Origin: Zootoca vivipara
Taxonomy: Eukaryota
Length of the DNA stretch: 64,000 bases
Assembly (NCBI RefSeq): GCF_963506605.1
Contig: NC_083282.1
Coordinates: 23,498,001-23,562,000 of the forward strand
Reading direction: 5' to 3'
The notes beneath the pieces are model-generated. The model saw only the letters and a program-made list of their open reading frames with translations. It did not search any database and was not told where the DNA came from. Of this stretch, positions 3,614-56,408 are shown one piece after another. A program made the translations under genes and the position numbers. The stretch's first letter is position 1; every line of letters starts with the position of its first letter.

Positions 3614-4139
3614 CATGGGCGTACCCAGGGGGGGCAGCTGCCCCCCCGAAGCTAAAAAAAGAAAGAAAGACAGCTTGCGGCATACACTTTTGTCCTTCTC
3701 GGTTGGGTACACGATCTTGCCACAGCGGGCACAGCGTAAGACCCCAGCGGAAGGCAGCGGTGGGAGTTGCCCCCGGCTGCCTGGAAAAGGCTGGAAAGCT
3801 GCGTCTGTGGCAAGGCTCGTAACACTGCAGAAGCAAGCGGGAGGAGGAAGAGGGAGAGGGCGTGAGGGAAAGAGAGCGCTCACACCAGCACGCACACCAG
3901 CACACACCAGCCTACAATCGGCGCGCACTGTTTTTTTCCAGGGTAAAAAGAGCAGAGGCCGGCGGGGAGGAGTTGCGGAGAACCGCATGACCGCCCCCTC
4001 CCCTCTGGGGGGCGTGGACATTGACCACGCCTCCTGGGAGGATCCCGGTCACGTCATCGCCAGCCAGCCAATCGGGTGGCTGGGGGTGGGGTGTGTGGCT
4101 TGCCTGCCCCCCCTAGTTTTGATCCTGGGTACGCCCATG
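3614..4139. mobile_element. Non-autonomous hAT element with captured GC-rich host sequence (Pack-hAT candidate)
   Basis: Perfect 16-bp TIR CATGGGCGTACCCAGG / CCTGGGTACGCCCATG; perfect 8-bp TSD GCTGTGAA (3606-3613, 4140-4147); CpG-rich interior; no transposase. Confidence 0.92.
3695..3733 (-). pseudogene. LASP1: Captured fragment of LASP1 first coding exon (LIM domain start, [13 protein letters not shown]) inside hAT element
   Basis: 13 consecutive codons match the recalled LASP1 N-terminus [23 protein letters not shown] (NEBL/LASP2 has V instead of I); no ATG and no remainder of the LIM domain. Confidence 0.85.
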
Positions 4140-4776
4140 GCTGTGAAACTGGTAAGACCAGCAGCAGCATGGGAAGAGAGGGTGCACAACGCCCCCCCCG
4201 TCAAAGTTGGGCCCCCCCAGCTGGCTTCCCAACCCCAGGGGAAAGGCACATTCATTTCATTTTCCTTTTTTATTTTTGAAAATAAGCCTGCATCCCCTGG
4301 CATCTCATCTAATTTGGACTCCAGTTCATCTGATCAATCTTTATCACACCTGTTCGTTATACGCATATAAATGCCACGGAGAGCAAATATCAAGCTGGGG
4401 GTGGTTGTGGAAGCCTGAATCTATAAAAATGTAAGGCACACATCTAGCAGGGATATTTACTGCCCATTGCCTGATAAAGATTAACTTGGTGTCGGCCATA
4501 AAATCTTTCAGTAAAAAAAAAAAAAAAAATTAAGAAAGGGAGTACTTTCAGTGGGGAACTGGCCCAGCATTCTGATCATTAGTTTCTTCTGTGAATGAAC
4601 AGAAAAAACAAGGAGAGCACCTGGAAATTAAAAGGATCTGTTAAAGTTTGGGTTTTAATCTCCCTTTTTGCTCCCCGGGTAGCATGCACAAGATACAGAA
4701 CTTGAAATAAGACAGCAGGAAATATTCCCTTCATATATGGTTTGAAATTCACACAAAGCAGCTGAACAAATGACAG

Positions 4777-4778
<2 letters not shown>

Positions 4779-4820
<42 letters not shown>
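4779..4820. repeat. (CA)n microsatellite
   Basis: Direct reading. Confidence 0.98.
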
Positions 4821-4821
<1 letters not shown>

Positions 4822-4892
4822 GCCCAACACTTGTGTGGTTTTGGTGTTTGTTGGTCAGTGACCATTTTTCACCTTAACTGCTACTTCTATGC

Positions 4893-5028
4893 CAGGCACC
4901 CCCAAACTGCGGCCCTCCAGATTTTTCTGCCTACAACTCCCATGATCCCTAGCTAACAGGACCAGTGGTCAGGGATGATGGGAATTGTAGTCCAGAACAT
5001 CCAGAGGGCTGAAGTTTGGGGATGCCTG
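4893..5028. mobile_element. hAT MITE (136 bp)
   Basis: TIR CAGGCACCCCCAAACT / AGTTTGGGGATGCCTG; perfect TSD TTCTATGC (4885-4892, 5029-5036). Confidence 0.95.
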
Positions 5029-5204
5029 TTCTATGCCCTCATCCTGCTCTGCCTTTCATCCACACTCTTGTTACAGGGTTACAAACTTGAACAAAATATT
5101 GGAGGGCTGGGCAGGTAAGCCCTAACTCACATAATCAGTCACAAGATGCACCAATTGAATGGCAATGTCCACCAGCTTTTTTGCGGGGGCTGGCCCTCTC
5201 TCAA

Positions 5205-5262
<58 letters not shown>
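5205..5262. repeat. (AAT)n microsatellite
   Basis: Direct reading. Confidence 0.95.
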
Positions 5263-5288
5263 GGGTGAAGGGACCTCGGCCCCTAGGA

Positions 5289-5378
5289 CATAGCTGCCAA
5301 GTTTTCCCTTTTCTCACGAGGAAGCCTATTCAGCATAAGGGAATTTCCCTTAAAAAAGGGGAGAACTTGGCAGCTATG
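5289..5378. mobile_element. 90-bp hAT MITE
   Basis: TIR CATAGCTGCCAAGTT / AACTTGGCAGCTATG; perfect TSD CCCTAGGA; near-identical inverted copy at 56460-56550. Confidence 0.95.
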
Positions 5379-5571
5379 CCCTAGGAGTTGACTCCTATGT
5401 GTTGCTAAATCCAATTATCTAAGGTGACTGACAAGGTTTCCTTTACAGGTGCCCACTATGTCTTCATGTCAGATATAGGCCTGATTTCGCACATCACCTT
5501 AAACGAAACCGCGGTTTAGCGTGAACACATGAGCATGTGTTATCACGTTAGCTTGCCACAGCAGCAATGTT

Positions 5572-5608
5572 GGATAGCTCATTTGGTAGAGCATGGGACT
5601 TTTAACCT
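5572..5608 (+). pseudogene. tRNA-Lys-derived fragment (SINE head)
   Basis: GGATAGCTCATTTGGTAGAGCATGGGACTTTTAA resembles the 5' half of tRNA-Lys; no T-arm. Confidence 0.6.
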
Positions 5609-5734
5609 AGAGGGAGAAGGGGGGGAAGTTCCATTGTGCAAGTGGCAATCCTTTTAACTAGCTGATCTACTTACTGCAAAGGATAACATTGCCCAGAGTT
5701 TCCAAATCATTACAGACTTGTCAGCCTTCTCTTG

Positions 5735-6010
5735 ATAACTGTGGAAGAATGGAAGATGCTTATTATATATATATAAGCAATGTACACAGGTTAATACGTT
5801 AGCAGGGTTTTAAGATTACTTGTAATTTTATTATGAACGGATAAATAGGTGATTTAAATATGTTACAAATTTAACAATGGACATGCAGTATCTTGATAAA
5901 TAATAGAACCAAGGAAGGGATTAGAGGGAAGTCAATTTGTTTTGTTTTGTTTTTGTATTGTGGTTGTTTTTTATTTTTGTTATTAATGTTATATAAAAAT
6001 TTAATAAATT
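5735..6010 (+). mobile_element. L1-clade LINE extreme 3' end / 3' UTR
   Basis: EEWK-type ORF2 end, AT-rich UTR with T-rich tract and AATAAA; similar to the tails at 48290 and 55410. Confidence 0.55.
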
Positions 6011-6779
6011 CAAACTTAGTTGTGTTCCCAGCTGAGAGATGTCTGAAGGGTTACCATCAGGTATAGCACACCAGCTCACTGAATGAAATATTAAAAATGA
6101 TTGTGCAGTGTTCGTCCTTTGAATATTTATTCAGAAGAAACACCTTGAATTCAGTGGGACTTACCCTATCTTGCCGGCACATGCTTTCTAGTACCCAGTG
6201 CCTGCGCATGGTACAAACACCAAAACCAGTTGTGAAGTCCTGGTGTCGTCCCCCCCCCCCACTTTTACCTAGAACAGAGGATGTGCTGGTTTAGCACTTC
6301 CTGTCCTAGCGGTGCCAATTCTCAGGTCAGACCTGTGCTACACAACTAATGACTCACCTCGCTGAGTGCAAGTCATCAAGCTTCCTTTGAAAAGCTCCCT
6401 GTTTTTGTAGCTCTAGGCACGTGTCAAGAGGTGGACATTTATGGGGGCCTAGGTAAAAAACCCCAATACATGGCTAGTAGTGCCCATGGAAGCTGGTCCA
6501 TTACGGTGAAGGAGGCCCTGCCCCACCAACTTCAGTCTGCCCCCAGCCAGCCACACTTGCCTGCCTCCTTATTTACATCCAATTCCAGGAGTGGCAATGC
6601 CTCTCAGCGTTGCTTCTTGTAAAGGAGGATGGGGACAAATCTAGGATTTGTTGGCTCTGCCAGTCATTGGCTCTGGCTTCACTTTCTGTTGGCCTTTCTG
6701 CCTTCTTCCCCACCAGTCTCAGTGGGCAGCAGCCTCCACTGGCCGGTGAGCTGTGTTTGGCTTAGTGGCTGACAGGTTA

Positions 6780-7129
6780 AAGGTAAAGGGACCCCTGACC
6801 ATTAGGTCCAGTCGTGACCGACTCTGGGGTTGCGCGCTCATCTCGCATTATTGGCCAAGGGAGCCGGCGTACAGCTTCCAGGTCATGTGGCCAGCATGAC
6901 AAAGCCACTTCTGGCGAACCAGAGCAGCACACGGAAACGCCGTTTACCTTTCCGCTGTAACGGTTCCTATTTATCTACTTGCATTTTTATGTGCTTTCGA
7001 ACTGCTAGGTTGGCAGGAGCTGGGACCGAGCAACGGGAGCTCACCCTGTCACAGGGATTCGAACCGCTGACCTTCTGATCAGCAAGCCCTAGGCTCAGTG
7101 GTTTAACCCACAGCGCCACCTGGGTCCTC
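6780..7129 (-). mobile_element. Sauria SINE, full length
   Basis: tRNA-like head with B-box GGTTCGAATCC, conserved body and ACCTTT tail; 13-bp TSD GGCTGACAGGTTA (6767-6779, 7130-7142). Confidence 0.95.
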
Positions 7130-7160
7130 GGCTGACAGGTTATGCAGGCCTAATGTATAG

Positions 7161-7281
7161 AGTTTGAACATGAGTTTGACCAAATTGCGGGAGGCAGTGG
7201 AAGACAGGAGTGCCTGGCGTGCTATGGTCCATGGGGTCACGAAGAGTTGGACACGACTAAACGACTAAACAACTAAACAAC
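7161..7281 (+). mobile_element. RTE-BovB-like LINE, short 3' end
   Basis: Matches the 3' end of the copies at 10940 and 19912; AAC-rich tail; TSD AATGTATAG (7152-7160, 7282-7290). Confidence 0.92.
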
Positions 7282-7600
7282 AATGTATAGTGTTGAACCT
7301 GTGCTAATTGAACAGTCTGTGCAACGCCGAATTAAGGACGGGCTATGTCCTAGGAAAAGAGATCACAGGTTCCATGTGTGACTAGGTTATGGGGAGGATC
7401 AAAAATGGGATTTGTTTATCTTGTGAACTGTCCTGAGATCTTTTGACGAAGGGTGGTGTATAAATCTAATAATAAAATAAAATAAAATATTTGATCAACT
7501 AAAGATGGCCAGCACTGGAACCTTTCTGCAAACTAGTCCTTTAAAATTCTCTTCCTACTTCCATAGGTATTTACTTGAAGGACTTTCAATAGCATTTATA

Positions 7601-7955
7601 GGTAAGGTAAAGGACCTATGGATGGTTAAGTCCAGTCAAAGGCGACTATGGGCCCATCTTGCTTTCAGGCTGAGGGACCTGGTGTTTGTCCACAGACAGC
7701 TTTCTGGGTCATGTGGCCAGCATGACTAAACTGCTTCTGGTGCAACAAAACACTGTGACAGAAGCCAGAGCGCACGGAAACGCCATTTAGCTTCCCGCTG
7801 CAGTGGTACCTATTTATCTACTTGCACTGGTGTGCTTTCAAACTGCTAGGTTGGCAGGAGCAGGGACAGCGTAAGGGAGCTCACCCCCTCTCGCGTGGAT
7901 TCAAACCGCTGACCTTCTGATCGAGAAGCCCAAGAGGCTCAGTGGTTTAGACCAC
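7601..7955 (-). mobile_element. Sauria SINE (older subfamily)
   Basis: Colinear similarity to 6780-7129. Confidence 0.9.
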
Positions 7956-8717
7956 ATATAAACACAGACTTGGGGAATTGAGGATGTACACACTGATGAG
8001 TACATTGGGTCCCAATTCTCTTTGTAGCTGCTGAGTCATGTAGAAATACAAGTACTGACCTGCAACTGAGGATTTCGTATTTGTAAAGGAAATTTGCCTC
8101 ATTTCTTTTTCTCAGCCAGATGTCTACTTTTCTCCAATCCACACACTGTTTCATACCCTCCCCATCCAATAGTTAAGAGTGCAGATGTTTGCGAAAATTC
8201 AGAATGTGGCTTGGTTGGGCATTGAGGCCTCGGTCTAGCTAACAAATGTTATGTGTAATGGACAGTGAAAACAAAGGAGTGACTAACTTGGGCTCCATTC
8301 ATAGGATGCAATCAAGGCAGGTAGTGCTGGCTGACGGTGGACTCAAGTTTGTCATAATGGACCAGCCTCCATTGATTTACACTTAACCCAGTTCAGTAGT
8401 TCCGGCTTGAGCAGAAATAAGCAGCCTTTTAAAAAAGTGTCCTAGCTTATGTTATACTTGTAGATGACACTAAAAGAGTTTTAAGAAGACCTGTCATGAG
8501 GAATTGTCAGCCATATGGGGTAGACCACATTCTACGGAAGAGTTTCTCAAACCTGACACATCAAATTGAGACTCAGAATGGCAAAAGGGTAGAAGCCCAA
8601 ATGAAAACACACCACGCCATTCACAAAACAGAGAAATGCGCTAATACATATTTGGGTGGAATGTGGGTCAATAATAAAGCCAGCGGACAGAAGCTAAAGA
8701 AAAAGAGCAGTGAGGAG

Positions 8718-9168
8718 TAAGAATGGAGGAAAAATCTGATTCGGTTCACATTTGCAGGTGATGCTGCTAAATTCACTTTCTGAAACAATAAACAAACCAA
8801 TACACAGCCATTTCTGGAATTTGGCACTTCTCTGAACTTTGCAACGTTGTTCTACACTACAGTCAAGTAATATGTAGAAAAATGCATATACCGAAGAGCG
8901 AATTAGGTAGGGTAAACTGTACAAATGCATCTATTAGTGAAAATAATACGCACAAATGCACCATTCTAGAGAAAGTCGCTTTGCAAAAATGTGCATATTA
9001 GGCAAAACTGCAGAAGAAGGTTTATCGTTAGGATAAATTTACGGTAAAATGCAAATGGGAGCCGCTTTAAAAAACAACAACACTGTAACGTGATGTGGAG
9101 AACTGAGTTTAGGAATGGAAAATTTAGAACCTGTGAGAAACCAAAACGGACAGATTCAGTCACCCCTG
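8718..9168. mobile_element. Old AT-rich non-autonomous DNA transposon-like repeat
   Basis: Reverse-complement similarity to 1128-1527. Confidence 0.5.
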
Positions 9169-9813: not shown

Positions 9814-9843
9814 AAGAAGAAGAAGAAGAAGAAGAAGAAGAAG

Positions 9844-9873
<30 letters not shown>
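9814..9873. repeat. (AAG)n microsatellite
   Basis: Direct reading. Confidence 0.98.
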
Positions 9874-9874
<1 letters not shown>

Positions 9875-22734: not shown

Positions 22735-23455
22735 TCTGGCGAAGGTGGTACATTTCAGGAAAGCTGGAACAGAAGAGGGCTTGTTTACAGGAGAGGAGCA
22801 GGTAGGGCCTGTACAACCTGGGAGGGTAGCCCATCTTGGAGAAGGAAAACTATTATCATAAACCAGGCATCCCCAAACTGTGGCCCTCCAGGTGTTTTGG
22901 CCTACAACTCCCATGATCCCTAGCTGACCAGTGGCCGGGGGAGATGGGAATTGTAGTCCAAAACATCTGGAGGGCCGAAGTTTGGGGATGCCTGTCATAA
23001 ACCTCCGCTACCTTTTGGCTGTACTCATTTGTGAGAAAGGCTTTTGGGGTAAGCCCTGAGGAACAATCCATAACCTTCTGCCTTTTGGGACACCTCTGGG
23101 AAAAGGCTAAGGAATAAGCTCTATACAAATACGGGATGGAGTCCCTAAGGCGGTGGGATGGCGTGTTGTATGCCTCTTTCCGGCAACTCCTGCAGTGAAG
23201 GCGGTGCCAAATGTATTGCTCTGCTTTCCTTTGAACCACGTCAGCGAGGCCGAGAGGTGGGTATTGTCATCCGGGGCAGCCCTGGACCTCCATGCACACT
23301 GCCCAGGTTTGTGCCCCAGAGAGGTCACTTTGGTGCTGTCAATGCATCAAAAACAACAACGTGGGAAGCAGCAGGGGTTGTGATTCTGCAGCTTTTTAAC
23401 TTCACCCCCCCCCCAGGCGCACTCCATTGTCTCTTGAGACAGGCAGGTGCCAAAG
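22735..23455 (+). mobile_element. Putative non-autonomous RTE derivative (5' UTR-like region joined to RTE 3' end)
   Basis: 22780-23030 is homologous to 47905-48040 (-) and has the GGAGAAGGAAAACT motif recalled from RTE 5' UTRs; it ends in the same terminus as the RTE at 15308. Confidence 0.6.
22864..22994. mobile_element. hAT MITE nested in the RTE derivative
   Basis: TIR CAGGCATCCCCAAACT / AGTTTGGGGATGCCTG; perfect TSD TCATAAAC. Confidence 0.95.
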
Positions 23456-26311: not shown

Positions 26312-26598
26312 TAAAATAAAAAAATTCCTTCAGTAGCACCTTAAAGACCAACTAAGTTTTTATTTTGGTATGAGCTTTCGTGTGCATGCACACTTCTTCA
26401 GATGAGGTTGATGGACTTCCATTTCATGCGGCTCAATGTGGTGCCTTCCATAGTTCTGGTTACAGGTAGGTAGCCGTGTTGGTCTGGAAATGCACACGAA
26501 AGCTCATACCAAAATAAAAACTTAGTTGGTCTTTAAGGTGCTACTGAAGGAATTTTTTATTTTACTTCGATCCAGACCAACACGGCTACCTACCTGTA
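26312..26598. mobile_element. Penelope-like element, inverted pseudo-LTR fragments
   Basis: Two nested inverted repeats of pLTR-type sequence (GAAAGCTCATACC...GTTGGTCTTTAAGGTGCTAC...CAGACCAACACGGCTAC); 12-bp TSD ACATTGTAGGGG (26300-26311, 26599-26610). Confidence 0.85.
26367..26403 (-). ncRNA. Minimal type-I hammerhead ribozyme motif of Penelope pLTR (stem I truncated)
   Basis: Minus strand reads AU-CUGAAGA-A-GUGUG-CAUG-CACAC-GAAA-GCUC-AUACC: catalytic core, stem II and palindromic AGCU mini-stem III. Confidence 0.7.
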
Positions 26599-28134
26599 AC
26601 ATTGTAGGGGGTTGGTCTAGATGACCCTTAGGTCCCTTCCAGCTCTACGGTTCTAAGATTCTATGAAGGTGTTCATCATTTCCTTTAATTTTCAAATCAA
26701 TGTGTTCCCCCCCTCCAGTGCTGCTTTGATTGTAGGTTTGATGTACTGCACAAGTGAGTACTGTTTTCAGATTGAATTTGTTTTCCGTTCAAGAGGATGC
26801 ATGTGTGGTTAAGAAACACACATACACCAAGAGTCTACAAAGGTGAGCTGTGTAAAAAAATCAAAGCTTTAGAGGGGTTGGGTTTTTTTAAAAAAGAGTG
26901 TATCAAGACTTTATTAGTTTGATTCATTTCTGCCTGTGCATGTGGTTTTGCTTTTGCTTGTTTCATGCACATGTTTTGTTGAGCTTGATCTGTCCCTGGT
27001 TCTCTGAGAATATCTGGTGTGGCACTTTCTGTTCCCTTGCTCTTGTGAAACTGGTGATCTAGCCAGGGATTGAGCCTGAGACCTTCTGCATGAACTGTTC
27101 ATGGGAGACTAGGAATTAGTGCTTAGTTTCTAAAATGCAAGGAAATAATGTCCATAAACACTCATCTCTGTATTACTGGGGCTGCCAACTGATTACCGGT
27201 CTCCTGCCTTCTAAGCAATTAATTGATTTAGTTTATATATATTTGCATTTTACAAATATCTCAGTCTAGATGCCATGTTTATTTTTTGTTGCATAATTTA
27301 AATCAGGCCCATAAGCCCCAGATGGCCTCAAAAAGTAAAGCATGCTCTGAACATGCCACTCTACCAATTGAAATTGGGCCCCAACCAGTTAATCAACTGA
27401 AAGCTCAGTTGATTCACTCATTGCTTCATTATTACTGTACTTTGCATGTTCCAGGGATGGAATGCAGCCCTGGAGAAAAAGGCTCTGGAGTGAATCACTG
27501 GCGTGAATCTTGAGTGGACTCTGACTGGTGTGACTCATCCAAGCAGTCATGCAAATGCTCTTTTTCAAGTGTGGCTGGAGTGCCAAATAATTCAATTAGA
27601 GCAGCTATCTGCTTGGCAGTGACACTTGACCCCACGCTAAACTCTGTACATCTTGTCTATCAATGCTTTCTTTTGAATGCGGGCCAGGTTTATTGGCCTG
27701 AAATCTTTATAGGAAATCCTGCTCAGTAGCAAATCCTGATTAGGAAGCTGTTATCGTTTTCTTTGCATGAAGGGTGAGCTTGCGACAGGCTCAGCATCTG
27801 GCTGCCATAAAAAAAAAGGCGCCTGATGAGTCAGGCTGTAGCTACCAACTGTGAGCAACCAGCTTGCTTGAACACCACTGATAACTCAGTTCTTATCATT
27901 CTTTATTGAAGTTTCCCCCCCCCAACACAAATTAAACCAACCAATGCTCTGTTGCTGTATACAGAGAAAATAAGAATCCCCTGGCACCTTAAGGATTAAC
28001 AGATTGATTGGGGCAAAAACTCTCCTGAACTACTTCATCGGGTGGATAAAGTTTTATCCTAGTTGGCAGCCAGATAGGCAGGCGCAGGAAGAGAGAGAGA
28101 GAGAATGGTAAACACGGGAGGCAAAAGGTAAATA

Positions 28135-32462: not shown

Positions 32463-34620
32463 TGCCACACCCTGATTAATTTGGGGACGTGACAATTTGA
32501 TGTCTGTATCAACGATGCTAAAAAAAACACTGTATCCCTCCTGCCGTACAGGTATCGTAAAGCTGGCAGCAAGGGGCAGCTGAGGATATGAGAATGTTAT
32601 GATGGGAGCAGTCAATGCAATGGACATATCAGGAAGCTTAAAAAAAAAACCATACCAGAATATTTACTCGCAGAAAAGGCTGATGCCATGTTACATTATC
32701 TAGGAGTACATTAGGAGCTGGGTTTGAGCAATGCATGGAAAGTCGTCTTTTATTGCTGAGACAGATGATAAATTAAGAGCTTTGCGCGAACTGCTTTAAA
32801 ACCCAGCAACTTTAAAACTGCTTTTAAACCCCTGGCGGCAAATATTGTTCAAAATGACTTTTGTTATTCAGAGGGCAGCAAACAAAACGAAGCACTTTTC
32901 CCTCCAACCCCAACCCACATCCTTTGCTTCTCTGCTGGCTTTGATGCCAAAAAAGGTATTGCAGCAGGTGTGTGGTTTCTAAAGCAATCACCTCTCTCTG
33001 CTTTTTTTTCACATGGTGAGGGGCTTTCAGAAAGGGGAGGGTGGTGATTTAATTCTTAGCGTACTGTATATAAAAAGTCCGAATAGTCGACGGGAATCAG
33101 AGCTGCAGACCATAGGCTGAACTTAAATGATTTTTAAACAAATCTGATCTGCTTCTGCTTTGAAATGGATTTTACAGTCTACAGCCCAAATGTAGATAAC
33201 AATTACCGGTAGCTTCATAATGTTTAATTTCCAGGGCTCGCCGGTTTTCAGCAGCAGAGCTTAAGACACAGGGCAGGTGAATTTATAACAGTGCATCTGA
33301 ACACGTGCAGAGTGCCTTTCCATTGCCACAAATAACACCTGCATATTGGAGATGAAGCTTTCTAGAGACAGAAGCTTTCAGATAGTAATCGGAATTAAGA
33401 TGCAACCTCTTGCCTTAGATGTTTTTAAGCGGATAATTTAAGTACGCACACATGAACGTGAAATGTGAGAATAACACTTCATGAACCCGGGACAGAGCCA
33501 AAACCTAAACCCTAGATCCTTGTTGTATCGGCAGCATACCCTAGATTCAGAAATCTTAACATGGACAATCAAATCTCACAACACTTCCGCTTGAAATTGT
33601 GCACATGATCCCTTCGCAGGCCAGCCTTTAGGAGCAAACAGAGGTCGCGAGGGTGCAGCTCTATGTTCATGGAAAGAGGTTGAGGGGCTTAGCAGCAGCA
33701 AATTCCGGCACGCATGGAGGGAAGAATGGAGAAGATGCAAAGGGGCTGTGCACAACTCTCAATTCTTAGTATCAGTGTTTTCTTACAACTGAAACAGACA
33801 TGAATGAGAGCAATTCACAGGCGATGAATTGCAGAAATCAGCTAAATATGTGAGTTGCAAGTTTCATTCGTCAGTCGCTTGGGAGAGCAAATGTCGGGCA
33901 CAACCCAGCACTTTCAGATTTCTCAGATTTTAACAGGAGACATTTCGGCACATGCTTGGGAAATTTATGTTGAATGAAATGTGAATTAAAAAGTGCTTCA
34001 CTTTGGCAGGATGGCACACAAAGTAGGGCTTGGTTTTGATCCCAAGTTAGTTATTGCTGCCCCACTGGTGTGAAATTTGAAAAGGTGTGTCACACAGCCG
34101 TATTACTCATAGGGCACCATATAAGGTTTGTAATGACCAAGCACTGCTGAGAAAAATCGAATAGAACTTGCTGCTCAAGCCTGTCTCAGAAGGAGAGTTC
34201 ACACATTACATTGAACAAGTGCACAATTTGTGCACAATTTGTGTTGAGCTGTACACTCACAGTAACCCACACGTAATGCTCAGTGTACAGACTGTGTACA
34301 CAGTTGGAACTGTATAAATCAACAAGTGTACATTCTCACTGGCAGTGTTTGGTAGAATGTGTGAAGAATCCGAGAGATTTCAATGAGTCTTGTGTGCTAG
34401 TGCAAGCAATAGGATTACATCTCCTAAAAGCTGATCAAATGGGACCCTGTATTCCTGCCATACACGATCCCCACACAGCTCTAGAATGTATCCCCGCATG
34501 AGACTTCTGGTTGCATTACGCTGGTGTAAAATGTTGTACCCCAGAGAGTCCTGATTTCAAAGAGTGCTAGTAGGTGCAACTGACTTCTGGTTGGAGTTTG
34601 CCCATTTTGACTTCCATTTA

Positions 34621-35371
34621 CAGGTGAAACTCGGAAAATTAGAATATCGTCGAAAAGTGCATTTATTTCAGTAATGCAACTTATTATTTTTTATTTTTCT
34701 TTTAATTTTGACAAATGCTTTCTTTTGGAAATTCCACAGTAATAAAACAAATAGTTAGGTAAAGGTAAAGGGACCCCTGACCATTAGGTCCAGTCGTGAC
34801 CAACTCTGGGGCTGTGCGCTCATCTCGCATTATTGGCCGAGGGAGCCGGCGTATAGCTTCCAGGTCATGTGGCCAGCATGACAAAGCCGCTTCTGGCAAA
34901 CCAGAGCAGCACATGGAAACGGCGTTTACCTTCCCGCTGTAGCGGTTCCTATTTATCTACTTGCATTTTGACGTGCTTTCAAACTGCTAGGTTGGCAGGA
35001 GCTGGGACCAAGCAACGGGAGCTCACCCCGTCACAGGGATTCGAACCGCCGACCTTCTGATCGGCAAGCCCTAGGCTCAGTGGTTTAACCACAGCGCCAC
35101 CTGTGGTTTCTTTTGGAAATTCCACAGTAATAAAACAAATAGTTACAATAATACAAAATTAAACAAAAATAAATATCGCTATTACATTTCATTAATTACA
35201 TTCCATTTATAATTGACCCGCCTAACGACAAATAATTACGACAAATAAAGGCTTGACATATCTTGCTTTGCATGCCATGCATCTGTCTCATATATTGGTT
35301 TCACCTTTTAAGTTGCATTACTGAAATCAATGCACTTTTCGACGATATTCTAATTTTCCGAGTTTCACCTG
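34621..35371. mobile_element. Non-autonomous Tc1-family element
   Basis: TA TSD; about 62-bp near-perfect TIR CAGGTGAAACTCGGAAAATTAGAATATCGTCGAAAAGTGCATT.ATTTCAGTAATGCAACTT. Confidence 0.93.
34758..35106 (-). mobile_element. Sauria SINE nested in the Tc1 element
   Basis: Nearly identical to 6780-7129; flanked by a 39-bp direct repeat (34719-34757, 35107-35145). Confidence 0.96.
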
Positions 35372-35869
35372 TATATTCACACCCAAGCGATTAAATATAC
35401 AAAAAACCCATGGGACTGTATCACATATGAGAGGAGGCATCTGCATAGACCATAAGATCTTCATTGGAGGACATTATCCAGATTCTGCTGCCTAATGAGG
35501 TGGGGCGGGTGGTTACTCAGGAAAAGCCCGTCTTGGAAGAGGTATATCAGTTACTCTCCCCAGAGAAGTTCCCCTGGCCACCCATATTATAAGTTTTTCA
35601 GCACCAGATGAATACGTTTATCGTTTCCCAAGTTATTAAATATCCAAAGCTTTCCATTTTTCAAACTATTTTTTGCCTTCCCTTGCTCGTTTTGAACTGC
35701 TCCCTGCCCATTTCATGCTGCCGTGTGGTTCCAAGCTAGCTTTTATTTTGTGCCGTTGGTGCCTTCATGTGCTGACGGCTTCTAGGGGCCGTTGATTGAA
35801 TTTGCACTTTGTCCATTTTAAATGGTGAGCACCTAGAAGATTTGGGCTGTACAGAAGTGTATCAAAACA

Positions 35870-48125: not shown

Positions 48126-48289
48126 AGGTTTGAGACCCATTGGTTAAAGACATCACTTGTATGGAAGAGACATCATCCCCCCCCACCCCACATTTATAAA
48201 GTGCCCTCCATTTAGGGAATACCCAAGCAGTGTTCCGAAATAGAATATAAAACCTAATACAGATAAAAAGTCAGCATTAAAACTTGAAA

Positions 48290-49215: not shown

Positions 49216-51266
49216 GTGCACAACCAGCTAACACCAACTGTGTCAGCCGTAGAATTTTTATTGGAAACATTCTGCCTAATTCTGCTCTGCTTTCTCATTT
49301 CTCCGCACAAAGTTCAGCTACTTTTTCTTTGTCCTTTCACTTGCTGACCATGTGCAGGTCGAACGCATCGCAAAATGTTTTTTGTTTTGTGCAGCTTGAG
49401 CCTCATTCTGAGAAACTGTTCGGTTTTCAAAAAGCTCGCTCGGAACGGAATAGGAACCTGTTAGGTTAATAGATTTCTCTTTGGTCTCTATAGCTATGTA
49501 TGGAAGCTTTGAACTCCTTACTTGTTGCACAGATCTTCTGATGATTTCAGCTTCTGGATTTCCCTTTTGTTTTTGCCTGATTCTGTGCAGAGCTATGCGT
49601 GCCCATTGAAATAAACGGGTTTGTGTAACTAACTTTGCACAGGAATGAATCCTCCTGTCTCCCTTTGGCTGATTAACATTATATGTCATGTTAAATGTGT
49701 GCGGTGAGTGTGCGTGTGTGTGTTTATTGGTTTGCTTTTGTTTCATTATGTATTTTGTGTTCTCATTTTGTACTTTTATGTTGTGAACGGCCCTGTGATC
49801 TTTGGATGAAGGGTGGTATGCAATAATAAAAGAAAAGAAGAAAAGAAAAATGTGTAAAGCGTGTCGAATGGACTTCCCTTAATGCTGGGTATCTGTTTGA
49901 CTTAAATTGTTAATTAGCTCTGAATATTCTGATTTTGAGAATATTGTGGTGTGAGGATCCTAACCCATTTTTGGCTAACCTTCACAGCCCTGTGGATGAT
50001 ATTCTAAAGAAATCTGCAATCAGAAGTCCTATAACATTTATATCTTAGGTCTCAAAAAGGACTGAGGGTGTCTTCAGCCTATGATGAATACTGTACAATG
50101 AAGGCACCGGATGTGCCTCTGTGAGGAGGGAACTCCATAGCTTGGGGGCAAGGTAAAGCCATTTCCAAAACTCCAGAATGTGGTTATAGATTTATTTTAT
50201 GCCCTTTATTCCCCCCTCCCTTTCCCAGCCTCTTATATACTTAGTGTACATGTGCCACACATTTTCACACACATTCCAGCACATTAACATCCATGACTTT
50301 TGCTAAACCAGCCCTGGTGTTCTGAGTGTTTCAGCATCAGAGCAAAGAAGGGGTTTCTTTTGCTGGATAGGCTACTATGAAATCGGGCTCTAATCTGTAT
50401 TTTGGGGGTATTCATGATCTCTAGAACTTGCACAGTCCTTGGAAACCGCTAGTAAAGTAAATCATGAGATGTTAAAAATATTTCATCATGTAATTGGTTT
50501 ATCTGGTTGATCAGTCACAGATAACTGCATGAATGACATTATTTATTTCAGCACAGTCTCTTGTGATTTACATTAATCTACACAATCTGGCGCCTTGAAA
50601 GCGATGAAAGGGCCTATTGTAATGTTATTCTGACCTCCTTGTCTACCATCATAGCCTTCTTTCCTGAATGAAGTTTTCTGATTCAAATACCCATAGCTCG
50701 TTAATTTCCCCTTTATCTAATTGTATTTGAAGCGATGTGCTATGCAGAATCCTACTGTGGCAGCTACTGACCACGGTAATCTGTGCATTCACTCAGAATG
50801 GATCCACATGATCATATTATGACCTGACTTAACCATTCGCTGCTCGGTGAGCCTGAGCGAAGGGCAGCTTTCTCTACCCCAGTGCAAGGTCAATGCAACC
50901 CAAGGTACGGACATTTTGCAAGCACTTTGTTCCCCTTTATGAAATTTTAAAGTTCTGTTCCTTTGTTCTCCCCTCCAGGAGATGTCCAGAAGGTGGCCAC
51001 AGGAGAACAGACATTTTTGTGTGCTGGGCTCCCCGTTTGTGGAATGTCCTCCCCAAGGAGGCTCGCCTGGTGCCTTCATTACGTACCTTTAGGTGCCAGC
51101 CCAAAACACCGTTTAATTAGCCAAAGGCCTGGAAGAAGAGCTATCTGTGGCCTTTTGAACTGCTTGTGGTGGTTAATATATGAAATAGAAGAATGTACAA
51201 TAGATGAAATGTGTGATGTAATAAGAGGAATATGTATTCGGTGAAAAGTGTGCTATTATGAAGTAT

Positions 51267-51267
<1 letters not shown>

Positions 51268-51306
<39 letters not shown>

Positions 51307-51528
51307 GTGTGGATCACTCCATGAGGAAACTGATCTTCAACAACAACAACAACAGTGTGGATCACTCCAACAACAACAGTGTGGATCACTCCATGGGGAA
51401 ACTGATCTTCCGAGTGGACACGGTTTAAAATTGCGCTGTAAGAAAGAACAAAAGAATCTCTCTCTCTCTCGTTCTCTCACACACAATGCTCCAGTAAATC
51501 AGTTTCCCCATGGAATGATCCACACTGC
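51268..51528. repeat. (AAC)n tracts interleaved with short duplications and an inverted repeat
   Basis: Unit AGTGTGGATCACTCCA(TG.GGAAACTGATCTTC) at about 51306, 51354 (partial) and 51378; inverted copy at 51499-51528. Confidence 0.85.
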
Positions 51529-54356
51529 TGGAGAACATGTGTGAATATTGCAACCACATTAATAGAACTACCATCCTGCCAGTTCAGAGCTCTTTACTAC
51601 TTTGTTAGTGAGTACATCAAAGCGGTGAAAGCTTAACTCATTCACATGATTCTGTGTACGGATCAGGAGAAATGGGACTCAAACCTGCGGCGAATCTGCC
51701 CAATGCCATATCTCAGATTTGCAGCTGAGCTTTCACACATCAGAAGGGTGCCATCATGACTTGTATTAGAAAATTTCAAAAAGAGGACCATATAAAATAC
51801 CAAATAAAATTATGATTAAAACTTACGAGTTTTTCTAATATGCGACCTCCTTGATCCAGAATCTCATATTTATACAAGGAAAAGAAGATGTAACAAAACT
51901 GTTAATTCCCAGGATTCTTCGGGGGAAGGCTGTGCAAAGTGTTTTAATACTGCTTTAAATGTATAGTGTAGAAGTAGCATCGGTAAAGATATTCCACTGA
52001 TATAGTTTATTTAAATATGAACCAAGTCTAGATAATCAGTTACTTAAGATTAATTAATTCTGTTTGAGGAAGGAAATAACCTTTCCTAGATTCCACTTAA
52101 TGCCTCCTACAGTCCGTGAAGTCAGATTAACAAAAAATATCATACAACATAAACTTCTGCCACTGTGGTTTCATTGAGGGGAAAAATCTCCCTCATTATC
52201 TGTTTAATTATTTTCTGACATAAGGCACTGGAAGGAAATACGTTATTTATTTTTTAAATAAAATATAATTTAAATAAAATTTAAATAAAATAAAATAAAA
52301 TATTTTTAAATAAAAAAAATCACATTAAGATACTGGATAAGTCTGTTTTTTCAGTTATCTCAATTTTATTTTTGTACATTATATGAAGGCAAACAGTTAC
52401 CAACAAAACTACATCTTGAAACTGGCTTGATGGAAATTAAAATCTAGCTAAACAGCAGGCTCAACTGGATTTGAGAATCATGTCATTTGACGGGTTTTCA
52501 TTGATTTATGCTTTATTCTGTTCTCACCACGTTTATTGTATTATGTCATAAACGCACCCCCCCCCCCACCAAAATCCAATGCTTCTGTTGCGTTGCTTAA
52601 AATCTTCACATTTGGACCGACCGATTGCCAATTATTATACTGCCTCCTTCGGACATTTCTGTTATCGGGAGTTAAGTTTTAAAAGTCTTCCCTTGTAACT
52701 TGCATTTAAGTTTTAAATGCAAGCTCGACAAAACACACATTGTGGCGGGGAGAATCGTGTTAAAAGCAAAAAACCCGGGTGCCTCTAGAGTGAAGATTTT
52801 CCATTAGAATGCATGAATATTTGATGGCTGGTCTTGAATGGGAGCATCTAGCTTACCAACATCCACATGCAGCATGTTTAAGGGCTGACCCAGCGCAAGG
52901 TTTTCACGCCATTTGAAATTCCCGATCAAGCCAATTTTATCGGAACAAAAGTAATCCAAGGCTGCAATCCTAAACCCTCAATGTTGATAGCTGGTGTGCT
53001 TGAGGGTACTCAGTAGGCTCCTCTCTGCTAGCTTGTTAAGCTACAAGCAGGTAGCTCTTCGCTGGTAGCCAGCAAAAATAGGGTGTTTGGGGGGGCAGGG
53101 TATTTGTGGACTTAGATCCAAGGGATCTAAATCCACAGGCCTCCTAGCTGTGTTGCACACATTGCAAATATATATATATATATAAAACCCCACCCTTTCA
53201 GGTGCAATGTTCGCTCTGTTTCTCTCTGGCCCCATTTAAGATTGCTCTGTAAAACTTTTATTTTTAATAGTAAATACTTACACTAGATGTTTTAATACTG
53301 GTCTATGAATAGCAATGGGGGGGGGGAGCCTGTGCAGATTTTCACCCCAAAACCCACATTTTACCAACAGGGCAGGCTTGCATTTACTTAGATGAATGAT
53401 AAGAACAGATTGGCCTACATTTCGATTTTCATATTTGACATCTGCTTTAACAGATACTGAATCCTCTTAAAGAACAAAGGCTACTTGGAGTCCAGTTTTA
53501 AGTGCCACCCAAAGCTCCTTTACTTACAGCGAAGGTGAATTTTGCAGATCGAGTGCTGCCTATGTTTTATTTAAAATTTCATTCGGGCATGCTGATGGGT
53601 TCACAGCCCTGGGTTGACACAAGTTCTTTTATTCTTTGATGGGAAACGAAACTAAATGATTCATTCATATATGTGTGCTTTATGTGTGTGTGTGTTTTGT
53701 ACACTTACAGGCAATACACTTAAATCAATGCTGCAAAAAAAACACACCACCACCATCAACGCACAAGACGTTTTCAACCCATCATCGTGCAAGTACTAAA
53801 GTTCAATCAAATGTTAACTTAGCTGACTGCTCCCACTGCTGGCAGGCTCACCTCATGCAGCCCAGCCGAGCCCTGATTTAATCACAATAATGGTTGGCTA
53901 TTTTCAGAAAAGCATGAAAGCAAAAGGGCAAGGGGAGGGGGAGAGAGATGGTTTCACTTTTCACTTCTGATATGCAAGCCTGGTATTGATATTGCTCACA
54001 GCTGAAGGGACGAAAAACTGTTCCCTTGCATTTAACAGGGCAACTGCGTCTCTCTAACTCGATAGAGCTGTTTATATGGTTTGGTCCTTTCTAGTTTGAT
54101 TCTTGTAGGCTTTCCACAGGCAGAATCTATGCCTGCATTGCAGGGGGTTGGACTAGATGACCCACAGGGTGCCTTCCAACTCTACAATTCTATGATTTAG
54201 CTTCCCATTGTGAGAACATGATGTTGGAGTACGTGGGTCTTTAGCCTAATCCAACAGGTCTCTTCTTACGTTAAGGCCAGCTTTCTCTCACTTGCCAACG
54301 GCTTCTCGCGTGTAGAGATCCCCCTCATTAATCCAGACAGGAAGGAAGTAGCACTT

Positions 54357-54963
54357 AGAATCATAGAATCATAGAATCATAGAATCATAGAATCATAGAG
54401 TTGGAAGAGACCACAAGGGCCATCCAGTCCAACCCCCTGCCAAGCAGGAAACACCATCAAAGCATTCCTGACAGATGGCTGTCATGCCTCTGCTTAAAGA
54501 CCTCCAAAGAAGGAGACTCCACCACACTCCTTGGCAGCAAATTCCACTGCCGAACAGCTCTTACTGTCAGGAAGTTCTTCCTAATGTTTAGGTGGAATTT
54601 TCTTTCTTGTAGTTTGAATCCATTGCTCCGTGTCCGCTTCTCTGGAGCAGCAGAAAACAACCTTTCTCCCTCCTTTATATGACATCCTTTTATATATTTG
54701 AACATGGTTATCATATCACCCCTTAACCTTCTCTTCTCCAGGCTAAACATACCCAGCTCCCTAAGCCGTTCCTCATAAGGCATCGTTTCCAGGCCTTTGA
54801 CCATTTTGGTTGCCCTCTTCTGGACACGTTCCAGCTTATCAGTATCCTTCTTGAACTGTGGTGCCCAGAACTGGACACAATACTCCAGGTGAGGTCTGAC
54901 CAGAGCAGAATACAGTGGTACTATTACTTCCCTTGATCTAGATGCTATACTCCTATTGATGCA
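54357..54963 (-). mobile_element. Young CR1 LINE 3' fragment
   Basis: Uninterrupted ORF2 C-terminus (ORF 54457-54804) and (ATCATAGA)n tail. Confidence 0.97.
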
Positions 54964-55202
54964 TCTAGATCAGTAGGACGCCGATGCAGCAACAGGGTTA
55001 TTTATATATGCCACTACAGCGGCCCGTGTTTTGTTAGAACTCTCCTCCCATCCAGAGGGGAGGGTTTGTGGGCGGAGCCCGTTCCCTGCGTCTGCAGGGG
55101 GGCATGTTCGGCCCCCTGCAGTAGTCCCTCCTCACTGCCGCGTCATACTCCTCAGCTGGCCAATAGGGCTTGCTGGGGGGCGGAGTCTGGCTCCGTTTAA
55201 AC

Positions 55203-55338
55203 CAGGCACCCCCAAACTGCGGCCCTCCAGATGTTTTGGCCCACAACTCCCATGATCCCTAGCTAAGAGGACCAGTGGTCGGGGAAGATGGGAATTGTAG
55301 TCCAAAACATCTGGAGGGCCAAAGTTTGGGGGTGCCTG
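55203..55338. mobile_element. hAT MITE (136 bp)
   Basis: TIR CAGGCACCCCCAAACT / AGTTTGGGGGTGCCTG; perfect TSD GTTTAAAC. Confidence 0.96.
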
Positions 55339-55409
55339 GTTTAAACGGCTGCTGCGGCGGGGATCTTTCTCTTTGCTTCCTGCCCGTTTACTGACTAAAT
55401 GGGGGGAAA

Positions 55410-55660
55410 TTGTGTACACTTGGAAACGTTGGCAGCATGAAGATAAATTCAACAGTGTAAATAAGTTTTGATGGAGTGATAATTGGGGGGGGGGAGGAAA
55501 ACTGGATAGTTTAGTTTATATAAAATATGCAGGGATTTATGCTATGCAAAATGAACCATGGAAAGTGAAGAAGGGAAGTCACTGATATTTTAAGGTTGCT
55601 TAAATGAATTTTCTGAATTGTAAAACAGAAAATTTAATAAAAATTATATATACCATAAAA
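55410..55660 (+). mobile_element. L1-like 3' UTR/tail
   Basis: AT-rich, GGGAAGTC motif as at 5927, AATAAA and A-rich end. Confidence 0.55.
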
Positions 55661-55847
55661 AAGACTGGACTTTAGCTGCTATAAAACAGAGCAGCTAAAG
55701 TTTTGCCCAGAGCCAGTGTTTGAAATCTGCAAATGAGCTCCACTGGCTGTCGCTCCATTTCCAGGCTCAATTTAAAGTGCTAGTCATTACCTATAAACAC
55801 ACCTCTACAGTTCAGGACTCAGGATCGTAGGAAGATACCTTCTACTG

Positions 55848-56408
55848 CAGTGTTTCTCAACCTTTTTTGGGCCACGGCACACTTTTCTATGAAAAAAAAT
55901 CCCGCGGCACACCAACTCTGTGCCGCCCTATATTTAGTTTAGTTTGGAGGGGAGACGTACCGGTAAAGCATGCCGCTGAAGAACTGCTGCGCGGTAGCCA
56001 GGCGGACCCACCAGGCGCAGAGCCTGCGGAGCGAGCGGGGACAGACCCCAGGCGGGCAGACACGGGCGCGCAGCTGCCGCCGCCTCCCTCCCAGCCGCCC
56101 CAGGCAGCCGCCGCCGCTCTGGCCCGGCGAAGGGAAGCCCTGCGCAGCCTTCCCCGCCTGCCTCCTCCTCCCCAGGAGGGCGATTTGCATTGTCACGTGC
56201 CTGGCGGCCGCCAATAAACAGCGCTGACCCGCCAGAAAGGAAGCCGGTCGGGTCACGACGCGGGCACTCGCCTCGCGTCATGACCCGGCCGGCTTCCTTT
56301 CCGGCGGGTCAGCGACGTGACAGTGCAAATCGCCCTTCTCGTCGCGGCACACCAGCCAGTGTTTCGCGGCACAGTAGTGTGCCGCGGAACACCGGTTGAG
56401 AAACGCTG
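55848..56408. mobile_element. Non-autonomous hAT (Charlie/Buster-type) element with captured CpG-rich sequence (Pack-hAT candidate)
   Basis: TIR CAGTGTTTCTCAACC / GGTTGAGAAACGCTG; perfect TSD TTCTACTG (55840-55847, 56409-56416); subterminal CGCGGCACAC repeats; CpG-island-like interior. Confidence 0.93.
55961..56023 (-). other. Exon-like cargo with both splice sites inside hAT element
   Basis: Acceptor TCTGTCCCCGCTCGCTCCGCAG, 63 nt, donor CG|GTACGT; frame LCAWWVRLATAQQFFSGMLY(R) has G/C at 18 of 20 third positions. Confidence 0.6.

What the first reader, a model, noticed from the sequence alone, without database searches (positions are those of the whole stretch)
3614..56408. Candidate system: CpG-island/exon shuttling by multiple lizard hAT MITE families
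Two unrelated hAT elements of about 530-560 bp in one 64-kb window both have intact ends, undecayed CpGs and gene-5'-end-like cargo, while their small relatives (90 and 136 bp) are empty. Inference: capture of open-chromatin gene-start DNA, for example by template switching during gap repair, may be systematic and recent in this lineage. That would be a vertebrate analogue of Pack-MULEs.
Basis: inference. Interest (0 to 1): 0.85.

Follow-up and report, generated by a model that had tools for sequence, protein, structure and literature searches.

The report
Two cargo-carrying lizard hAT transposons
Two short cut-and-paste transposons in this stretch of lizard DNA carry foreign GC-rich DNA (one holds 13 codons of the LASP1 gene; the other holds an insert that has multiplied about 130-230-fold), which is a known kind of gene-fragment capture, and two cases cannot show that it is systematic.

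Summary
Both elements exist as described. E1 (3614-4139) has perfect 16-bp inverted ends and a perfect 8-bp target duplication. E2 (55848-56408) has 14/15 matching ends and a perfect 8-bp duplication. They are the two largest CpG-island-like stretches in the window.

E1 carries, on the minus strand, 13 codons identical to residues 5-17 of LASP-1. There is no start codon before this patch and no splice donor after it. The rest of its interior is unidentified, and I could not measure its copy number.

E2 is a palindromic MITE of about 320 bp belonging to a family at thousands-fold depth in this species. A sister species about 3.4% diverged almost lacks that family. A 240-bp insert (GC 0.73) sits in E2's left half at about 130-230-fold depth. 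So about half of E2's "CpG-island cargo" is the family's own core. The insert's source is unknown.

The 90- and 136-bp MITEs have different ends and are not shown to be relatives.

This is Pack-TIR-type capture, known in animals (Tan 2021), although multicopy cases are rare. Two elements cannot establish systematic capture of gene 5' ends. The scan has already noted many "Pack-hAT" elements elsewhere in this genome.

The parts
3606..3613 (.). E1 left target-site duplication GCTGTGAA
3614..4139 (.). E1: 526-bp non-autonomous TIR element. It has 16-bp perfect TIRs at 3614-3629 and 4124-4139, and a subterminal GGGGGCAGCTG motif at both ends.
3695..3733 (-). 39-nt patch encoding [13 protein letters not shown], which equals LASP-1 residues 5-17. 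There is no ATG before it and no GT donor after it.
3647..4106 (.). E1 interior (about 460 bp, GC about 0.63). It is unrelated to the AT-rich interiors of distant relatives that share E1's ends. Apart from the LASP1 patch its origin is unknown. The right part has CCAAT, CRE-like and GC-box-like motifs (descriptive only).
4140..4147 (.). E1 right target-site duplication GCTGTGAA
55840..55847 (.). E2 left target-site duplication TTCTACTG
55848..56408 (.). E2: 561-bp non-autonomous hAT-type element. Its TIR starts CAGTG, and it has repeated subterminal GCGGCACAC motifs.
55848..55935 (.). E2 left end of the base MITE. The end bin (55821-55881) is at thousands-fold depth in organism A.
55936..56173 (.). 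E2 insert ('cargo'): about 240 bp, GC 0.73, CpG o/e 0.77. The left boundary may lie at about 55927. Depth is about 130-230 times single copy in organism A and 0-4 in organism B. RNA reads are strand-biased and imply minus-strand RNA.
55961..56023 (-). It is only a pattern. RNA reads cross the 'donor' unspliced; 8 of 12 of them lack 6 nt at 55957.
56174..56339 (.). E2 palindromic core: arms 56174-56262 and 56274-56339, with ATTTGCAT, CACGTG and GGAAG motifs in the arms. It is family-own, with depth close to that of the ends.
56340..56408 (.). E2 right end, containing its own short hairpin.
56409..56416 (.). E2 right target-site duplication TTCTACTG
5289..5378 (.). 90-bp MITE with TIR CATAGCTGCCAAG and TSD CCCTAGGA.
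56460..56550 (.). 91-bp MITE of the same family, TSD ACGCTGAC. Depth is about 1.3x10^5 times single copy in organism A and about 1.1x10^4 in organism B.
55203..55338 (.). 136-bp hAT MITE with TIR CAGGCACCCCCAAAC and TSD GTTTAAAC. Depth is about 2x10^5 times single copy in both species. It shares 8/15 terminal bases with E2 and is not the same family.
22864..22994 (.). 131-bp copy of the same MITE family as 55203-55338, TSD TCATAAAC.

Best explanation
E1 and E2 are two unrelated non-autonomous cut-and-paste transposons of hAT type (8-bp target duplications). Each holds DNA that does not belong to its own ends, which makes them Pack-TIR-type elements.

E1's interior is a GC-rich mosaic. It includes a 39-nt copy of the LASP1 first coding exon (codons 5-17), joined to unrelated sequence on both sides. 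A short patch of this kind is what repair synthesis with template switching after excision or a break would give. That mechanism is inferred.

E2 is a roughly 320-bp palindromic MITE that is CpG-rich in itself. Its family multiplied to thousands-fold depth in this species after it split from a relative about 3.4% diverged. A 240-bp GC-rich insert of unknown source was acquired in E2's left half, and insert-bearing copies then transposed to about 130-230 copy-equivalents. E2's CpGs are intact mainly because the copies are young.

Shown: the element anatomy, the LASP1 identity, the depth profile, and the family's absence from the sister species.

Inferred: the capture mechanism, host origin of everything except the LASP1 patch, and E2's absence from this site in another individual.
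For: Element boundaries: TIRs and TSDs are given.

LASP1: E1's minus-strand ORF matches PDB 1ZFO (LASP-1 N-terminal peptide) at 13/13 residues, E 0.003. No other LASP1 motif occurs in the window.

E1's ends: the 16-nt TIR plus the subterminal GGGGGCAGCTG motif recur in four eukaryotic metagenome contigs whose interiors are unrelated and AT-rich. So E1's GC-rich interior is not the family's conserved core.

E2 depth (single-copy flank is about 25 in X1, about 5 in X4 and about 13 in X13):
- End bins: 193,000-210,000 (X1), 54,000-57,000 (X4).
- Palindrome arms: 147,000-156,000 (X1).
- Insert bins: 3,281-5,443 (X1), 673-1,162 (X4).
- Organism B: 0-4 over the insert and core, although its contigs cover the flanks.

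E2 structure: removing 55936-56173 makes the left half collinear with the reverse complement of the right half.

Other copies: a contig variant joins 56061 to 56177 with the filler GATA at depth 123. The insert is therefore linked to this MITE in copies other than the reference locus (table 5c).

Probable empty site: a 296-nt X4 contig aligns to 55623-55839 and stops exactly at the TSD. Its remaining 79 nt equal the distance from 56409 to 28 nt inside the next MITE, as an empty site would give (table 8).

Precedent: hAT is the commonest Pack-TIR carrier in animals (PMC8277862). Maize Ds elements carry filler DNA that is sometimes genic (PMC3260210).
Against: - No parental locus was seen for either cargo.
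- Only 39 nt of E1 are tied to a gene, and that tie is to the mammalian protein sequence, not to the lizard's own LASP1 DNA.
- E1's copy number and mobility were not tested, because the single read-laying run went to E2.
- E2's insert has no counterpart in the sister species' contigs. That is unexpected for a conserved host gene start, although GC-rich DNA often drops out of short-read contigs.
- Summed contig depth is not a true copy number.
- The empty-site reading rests on contig geometry. The joint row itself was not listed.
- No matching transposase was found.
Confidence: 0.6

Rival explanations
1. The interiors are family-own. E1 and E2 would be internal-deletion derivatives of autonomous hAT elements, or ordinary MITE cores, and not carriers of captured host gene starts. 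The LASP1 patch would be a small piece of old filler of no special meaning.
For: E2's palindromic core (56174-56339) is about as abundant as its ends, so it is family-own. Organism B has no counterpart of E2's insert. GC-rich, promoter-like motifs also occur in an unrelated high-copy repeat next to the 136-bp MITE (about 54960-55700), so such motifs do not prove host origin. Another follow-up in this genome leaned the same way for a CpG-rich hAT core (s1-849355; an unchecked note).
Against: E2's insert is 30-60 times less abundant than the core and interrupts an otherwise collinear palindrome. No ORF of either element hits a transposase or any other Pfam family. The insert's sense direction, read from the RNA strand bias, runs outward towards the nearest end, unlike the 5' end of a transposase gene. 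LASP1 codons cannot come from a transposon.
Confidence: 0.2
2. Capture happened through insertion preference and not through repair. hAT elements tend to land near gene starts. Two nearby insertions, or one end plus a cryptic end, then moved the intervening promoter/first-exon DNA as a composite transposon. This would explain a 5'-end bias without template switching.
For: The cargo of both elements looks like promoter-proximal DNA. The scan holds a note of a composite of two hAT MITEs plus cargo in this genome (unchecked). hAT preference for gene 5' regions is established knowledge for Ac/Ds and Tol2 (from memory, not tested here).
Against: In E1 the LASP1 homology is only 39 nt, with no start codon before it and no intron-like GT after it. 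That fits short template-switch patches better than a contiguous genomic block. E2's insert sits inside one half of a palindromic MITE, not between two complete ends.
Confidence: 0.1
3. E2's insert is another repeat nested in the MITE, and its depth reflects that repeat's own copies, not a cargo-bearing subfamily.
For: Depth alone cannot tell the two apart. Nested insertions are common in this window, for example a SINE inside a Tc1/mariner element at 34616-35376.
Against: The insert has no TSD, no TIR and no poly-A at its borders. A variant contig links part of the insert directly to the MITE arm at a different junction (table 5c). Organism B, which shares the old repeats, has none of it.
Confidence: 0.08

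Closest known systems
Pack-TIRs of animals (Tan et al. 2021, Nat Commun, PMC8277862)
   Same: These are TIR transposons, mostly hAT (208 of 370), that hold duplicated host sequence between their ends. Template switching during gap filling or replication is the proposed mechanism, and some are transcribed. The multicopy frog case carries a gene's 5' UTR inside a hAT non-autonomous element.
   Different: Only 4 of 370 were multicopy, whereas E2's insert is at about 130-230-fold depth. That survey found none in the lizard, where it scored 0 hAT elements. Here no parental copy was identified in the genome, which is a defining criterion of that study.
Pack-MULEs of rice and other plants
   Same: They are non-autonomous DNA transposons that carry gene fragments, often GC-rich gene 5' ends (from memory: Jiang et al. 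2011), and they can amplify.
   Different: Pack-MULEs belong to the Mutator superfamily, with long TIRs and 9-11-bp TSDs. E1 and E2 have short TIRs and 8-bp TSDs, so they are analogues and not members.
Maize Ds2 / Ds-like elements with filler DNA (PMC3260210)
   Same: These are hAT non-autonomous elements whose interior is replaced by unrelated filler. The filler is occasionally genic and clusters into multicopy groups, and its source is often untraceable.
   Different: They are plant elements. No bias to gene 5' ends or CpG islands has been reported, and most do not respond to transposase.
SPIN / Charlie-type hAT MITEs of tetrapods (from memory: Pace et al. 2008)
   Same: E2's terminus CAGTGTTTCTCAACC resembles the SPIN terminus CAGTGGTTCTCAACC as I recall it. 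Both are lineage-specific bursts of short non-autonomous copies.
   Different: The consensus was not available to any tool here, so this is not tested. A full-text search for that string returned one unrelated paper.
Tip100-group hAT (TIR CAGGGGCGGAG, 8-bp TSD; PMC12511174)
   Same: E1's first 11 bases, CATGGGCGTAC, match at 8 of 11, and the TSD length is the same.
   Different: The third base is T, not G. P-superfamily elements also give 8-bp TSDs and start with CATG, so E1's superfamily is not settled.

Membership tests
hAT superfamily (E2) | 8-bp target-site duplication | tested here: met
   TTCTACTG at 55840-55847 and 56409-56416
hAT superfamily (E2) | Short TIR starting CAG/TAG (YARNG) | tested here: met
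   CAGTG... / CAGCG..., 14/15 complementary
hAT superfamily (E2) | Autonomous partner encoding a hAT transposase with the same ends | tested here: not met
   None in the window. The long ORFs have no Pfam hit. The rest of the genome could not be searched.
hAT superfamily (E1) | 8-bp target-site duplication | tested here: met
   GCTGTGAA on both sides
hAT superfamily (E1) | TIR of YARNG type | tested here: inconclusive
   The terminus is CATGG. It matches the Tip100 TIR at 8/11, but a CATG start with an 8-bp TSD also fits P-type elements (from memory).
Pack-TIR (criteria of PMC8277862) | Recognisable TIR-TE ends with a non-TE sequence between them | tested here: met
   E1: its ends are shared with distant relatives but its interior is not. 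E2: the insert interrupts a collinear palindrome and is 30-60 times rarer than the ends.
Pack-TIR (criteria of PMC8277862) | Parental copy of the captured sequence identified elsewhere in the genome | not testable with these tools
   No tool searches the lizard assembly. For E1 the source gene is named only through protein identity to LASP-1. For E2 no source is known, and the sister species shows none.
Pack-TIR, multicopy class | The same cargo between the same ends at several loci with different TSDs | tested here: inconclusive
   E2's insert is at about 130-230 times single-copy depth in two individuals, and one variant junction was seen. Individual loci and their TSDs were not seen. E1 was not tested.
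Pack-MULE | Mutator-type long TIRs and 9-11-bp TSD | tested here: not met
   TIRs are 15-16 bp and TSDs are 8 bp.
CpG island (Gardiner-Garden criteria) | At least 200 bp, GC above 0.5, CpG o/e above 0.6 | tested here: met
   E1: GC 0.62, o/e 0.61 (borderline). E2: GC 0.65, o/e 0.98. Methylation state was not tested.

The most novel reading that the evidence does not exclude
This lizard lineage has an ongoing, genome-wide process in which several hAT families pick up promoter-proximal and first-exon DNA, then amplify the loaded elements to tens or hundreds of copies. That would scatter CpG-island-like modules, start codons and splice donors through introns and intergenic DNA. Such a scale is not reported for any vertebrate: only 4 of 370 animal Pack-TIRs were multicopy. 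In this window the only sizeable CpG islands are transposon-borne.
Probability: 0.3. Interest if true: 0.7.

Novelty: new member of a known kind. Interest (0 to 1): 0.45.

Why it matters
If loaded hAT elements are common and mobile in this lizard, three things follow.
- Many predicted CpG islands, promoters and first exons in squamate genomes would be transposon cargo and would mislead annotation.
- The species would be a rare vertebrate in which capture and amplification of gene fragments by DNA transposons can be studied while still active. That includes whether capture prefers gene starts.
- Dispersed promoter and donor cassettes could seed chimeric transcripts.

On the evidence from this window alone, this is two more examples of a known phenomenon. 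One of them is notable for being multicopy and lineage-specific.

Tried and rejected
- The search for homologous proteins with E1's 151-aa minus ORF found nothing even at E<=10. This says nothing about copy number.
- The search of earlier findings by sequence was blank for both elements.
- Pfam gave no family for any ORF of E1 or E2, or for ten long window ORFs.
- Rfam gave no family at gathering score anywhere in the window. So E2's octamer-bearing palindrome is not a known snRNA or other RNA gene.
- Viral contigs: the six hits to E1's 16-mer lack the subterminal motif and are chance matches. There was no E2-type end. One call failed on pattern syntax.
- Full-text search for the terminal sequences gave only the Tip100 TIR.
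- No paper in the held library describes Pack-type hAT capture in squamates.
- The idea that the 90- and 136-bp MITEs are empty relatives of E1 and E2 was rejected, because their termini differ.
- The idea that E2's 63-nt AG...GT segment is a working exon is not supported. RNA reads cross its donor.
Only one read-laying run of at most 6,000 letters was allowed, and E1 lies 52 kb from E2.
Full report
**What is there**

The window is lizard DNA with no Pfam-recognisable gene in its long ORFs. It is full of small transposons.

The finding rests on two elements.
- E1 is 3614-4139 (526 bp). It has a perfect 16-bp terminal inverted repeat, CATGGGCGTACCCAGG. That pattern matches only those two places in the window at up to 3 mismatches, against 0.24 expected by chance. 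It is flanked by a perfect 8-bp direct repeat, GCTGTGAA.
- E2 is 55848-56408 (561 bp). Its ends are CAGTGTTTCTCAACC and CAGCGTTTCTCAACC, and it is flanked by TTCTACTG on both sides.

Neither interior recurs in the window. E1 has GC 0.62 and CpG o/e 0.61. E2 has GC 0.65 and CpG o/e 0.98. The window as a whole has CpG o/e 0.36. In a sliding scan, E1 and E2 are the two largest CpG-island-like stretches of the 64 kb. The physical observation therefore holds.

**The "small relatives"**

A census of perfect 10-bp inverted ends with 8-bp duplications finds two families of small MITEs.
- CATAGCTGCC...: 5289-5378 (90 bp) and 56460-56550 (91 bp).
- CAGGCAyCCCC...: 22864-22994 (131 bp) and 55203-55338 (136 bp).

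Their CpG o/e is 0.18-0.46. Their ends are not those of E1 or E2. The 136-bp MITE shares 8 of 15 terminal bases with E2. The 90-bp MITE shares little beyond CAT-G with E1. They are other families with the same TSD length, not empty versions of E1 and E2.

**E1**

On the minus strand, 3733-3695 encodes [13 protein letters not shown]. A search of all PDB chains with the 151-aa ORF gives the N-terminal LASP-1 peptide (1ZFO) as best hit. It matches 13/13 identical over LASP-1 residues 5-17, E 0.003. Other LIM proteins score far worse.

The codons before the patch are not MNPN, there is no ATG, and GAC, not a GT donor, follows the last codon. The demonstrable gene piece is therefore about 39 nt, joined to other sequence on both sides. 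No other LASP1 motif is in the window, so the source gene lies elsewhere.

The rest of the interior is GC-rich with CCAAT, CRE-like and GC-box-like motifs. Similar motifs also occur in an unrelated high-copy repeat at about 54960-55700, so they do not prove a host promoter.

E1's ends belong to a wider family. The exact 16-mer plus a subterminal GGGGGCAG(CTG) motif occurs in four eukaryotic contigs from two JGI metagenomes. One of these is a 179-bp AT-rich element (L002 2074-2252). Another has this end next to a LINE reverse transcriptase (L003). Only the ends are shared, so E1's GC-rich interior is not the conserved core of that family.

E1's first 11 bases match the Tip100 hAT TIR CAGGGGCGGAG at 8/11. 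I call E1 hAT-like, but a P-type element is not excluded.

E1's copy number, age and presence in other individuals were not tested.

**E2: structure**

Besides the ends, E2 has repeated GCGGCACAC subterminal motifs and a strong palindrome at 56174-56339. Folded as DNA, 56174-56408 gives -102.7 kcal/mol, z = -14.4.

If 55936-56173 is removed, the left half becomes collinear with the reverse complement of the right half. The order is TIR, then the GCGGCACAC hairpin, then the ATTTGCAT-CACGT block, then the GGAAG block. E2 is therefore a roughly 320-bp palindromic MITE with an insert of about 240 bp (GC 0.73, CpG o/e 0.77) in its left half. The base MITE itself has CpG o/e 1.2-1.3 in the arms and right end.

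**E2: reads**

I laid contigs of two individuals of the species (X1, X4), contigs of a second species (X13) and raw RNA reads (X21) on 55150-56950 at 85% likeness. The unique right flank gives the single-copy summed word depth: about 25 in X1, about 5 in X4 and about 13 in X13.

| Region | X1 | X4 | X13 (organism B) | Approx. ratio to single copy in organism A |
|---|---|---|---|---|
| E2 end bins | 193,000-210,000 | 54,000-57,000 | 37-87 | thousands |
| Palindrome arms | 147,000-156,000 | about 41,000 | 0-5 | thousands |
| Insert bins (55943-56125) | 3,281-5,443 | 673-1,162 | 0-4 | about 130-230 |

The tool warns that summed depth is not a copy number, so these ratios are rough.

Organism B shows almost none of E2, although its contigs cover the flanks. 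It holds the 136-bp MITE at the same level as organism A. B differs from the reference by about 3.4% in unique flank (11 differences and 1 gap in 338 nt, record 16).

I conclude three things.
- The palindromic, CpG-rich core is the family's own, not cargo.
- The family expanded in this lineage after the split from B, or entered it then.
- The insert marks a subfamily that has itself multiplied.

A variant contig joins 56061 to 56177 through GATA at depth 123. This shows that the insert is attached to this MITE in other copies too (table 5c).

**E2: age at this site**

A 296-nt contig of individual X4 aligns to 55623-55839 and stops exactly where the left TSD begins (record 23). Its remaining 79 nt equal 8 (TSD) + 43 (56417-56459) + 28 nt into the next high-copy MITE. 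That is where a k-mer contig across an empty site would break. If E2 were present, the contig should instead run on about 30 nt into E2's end.

I read this as probable absence of E2 from this site in that individual. Its haplotype differs from the reference by about 1.4% in flank. The corresponding joint row was not among those listed, so this is an inference.

Recent insertion is enough to explain the intact CpGs. Hypomethylation or "open chromatin" is not needed and was not tested.

**E2: is the insert a gene start?**

On the minus strand the insert reads as GC-rich leader, then GGC ATG CTT TAC CG, then GTACGT, then 34 nt, then the transposon end.

RNA reads over 55882-56064 are strongly strand-biased: first mate on + is 27/12.5/4, against 7.6/0.3/0.2 on -. 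In the usual stranded protocol this means minus-strand RNA, which agrees with that orientation. But the reads run on across the putative donor into the transposon end, and 8 of 12 carry a 6-nt deletion at 55957 that spans it. So there is no sign of splicing.

No protein, Pfam or Rfam match names a source. The sister species has no counterpart, with the caveat that GC-rich DNA often drops out of contigs.

"Gene-5'-end-like" is therefore a resemblance, not a finding. It parallels what other notes of this scan report for other elements.

**Mechanism**

The best-supported reading is Pack-TIR-type capture. After excision or a break inside a non-autonomous hAT element, repair synthesis switches template and copies short stretches of ectopic DNA into the element. 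Elements that keep both ends remain mobile and can amplify.

E1's 39-nt exon patch embedded in unrelated sequence fits this. E2's insert within one arm of a palindrome fits a break inside the element. Both points are inference, because no junction microhomology could be examined without the sources.

The rivals are:
- family-own interiors, which is true for E2's core and possible for its insert;
- composite mobilisation after two insertions near a gene start;
- a nested independent repeat.

**Comparison with what is known**

Tan et al. 2021 (PMC8277862) found 370 Pack-TIRs in 100 animal genomes. Of these, 208 were hAT and only 4 were multicopy; one was a frog hAT-N element carrying a 5' UTR. 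They proposed gap filling and fork-stalling/template-switching mechanisms. Their lizard entry (anoCar2) had only 77 TIR elements scored, no hAT and no Pack-TIR, so squamates were effectively unsurveyed.

Maize Ds elements carry filler that is sometimes genic (PMC3260210). Pack-MULEs are the plant analogue, but E1 and E2 fail their defining features (long Mutator TIRs, 9-11-bp TSDs).

No squamate paper on this was found in the held library.

**The system claim**

Two elements in one window cannot show that capture is systematic or biased to gene starts.

The scan's own notes list 48 "Pack-hAT" entries in this genome. Several follow-ups report hAT elements with first exons of OSBPL10, BRI3BP, UTP20, MCAT and others, some at tens to about a hundred copies. 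One follow-up leaned to a family-own CpG-rich core. These are unchecked AI notes and not independent evidence. They do make the genome-wide test worth running.

**Verdict**

This is a new member of a known kind, of moderate interest. The interest lies mainly in E2's multicopy, lineage-specific, probably still polymorphic loaded subfamily, and in the fact that the window's only sizeable CpG islands are transposon-borne.

- No tool could search the lizard assembly.

Noticed in passing
L001-L004 (JGI metagenome contigs Ga0181449_100878, Ga0058703_1011366, _1018847, _1044611): E1's exact 16-nt TIR plus the subterminal GGGGGCAG(CTG) motif occurs in AT-rich eukaryotic contigs from two metagenomes, and only the ends are shared with E1. 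L003 has a LINE reverse transcriptase (RVT_1, E 1.9e-30) right inside that end. L001 694-763 also has an E2-type hAT end, with GCGGCACAC subterminal repeats and the terminus CAGTGTCTCGCAAAC. Both end types therefore exist in other, unidentified eukaryotes, which means either a wide distribution or horizontal transfer.
   Followed up: partly
window 56460-56550 and 5289-5378: The 90/91-bp MITE (TIR CATAGCTGCCAAG, 8-bp TSD) is at about 1.3x10^5 times single-copy depth in organism A but only about 1.1x10^4 in organism B. That is a roughly tenfold lineage-specific expansion.
   Followed up: no
window 55203-55338 and 22864-22994: The 131/136-bp hAT MITE (CAGGCAyCCCCAAAC...) is at about 2x10^5 times single-copy depth in both species. 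It is abundant in RNA reads on both strands.
   Followed up: no
window 34616-35376: A Tc1/mariner-type element with 68-nt TIRs (97% complementary) and a TA duplication. A CpG-rich tRNA-SINE-like repeat (about 34751-35100) is nested inside it.
   Followed up: no
window about 54960-55700: A GC-rich stretch with CCAAT and GGGGCGGAG motifs surrounds the 136-bp MITE. Where reads were laid (55333-55698) it is a repeat itself, at about 230-5,400 times single-copy depth in both species. This warns that promoter-like motifs in this genome's repeats are not evidence of captured host promoters.
   Followed up: partly
window 55957-55962: 8 of 12 RNA reads over E2's insert lack 6 nt (CGGTAC, one unit of a TACCGGTAC repeat). 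No DNA contig of X1 or X4 shows this deletion (table 4). The expressed copy or copies therefore differ from the bulk of the genomic copies, or the RNA comes from another individual's variant or from the unseen source locus.
   Followed up: no
window 26314-26600: Another palindromic element: 74-nt arms at 97% (26314-26387 / 26490-26563), plus a perfect 30-nt inverted pair at 26459-26488 / 26571-26600. It was not examined.
   Followed up: no
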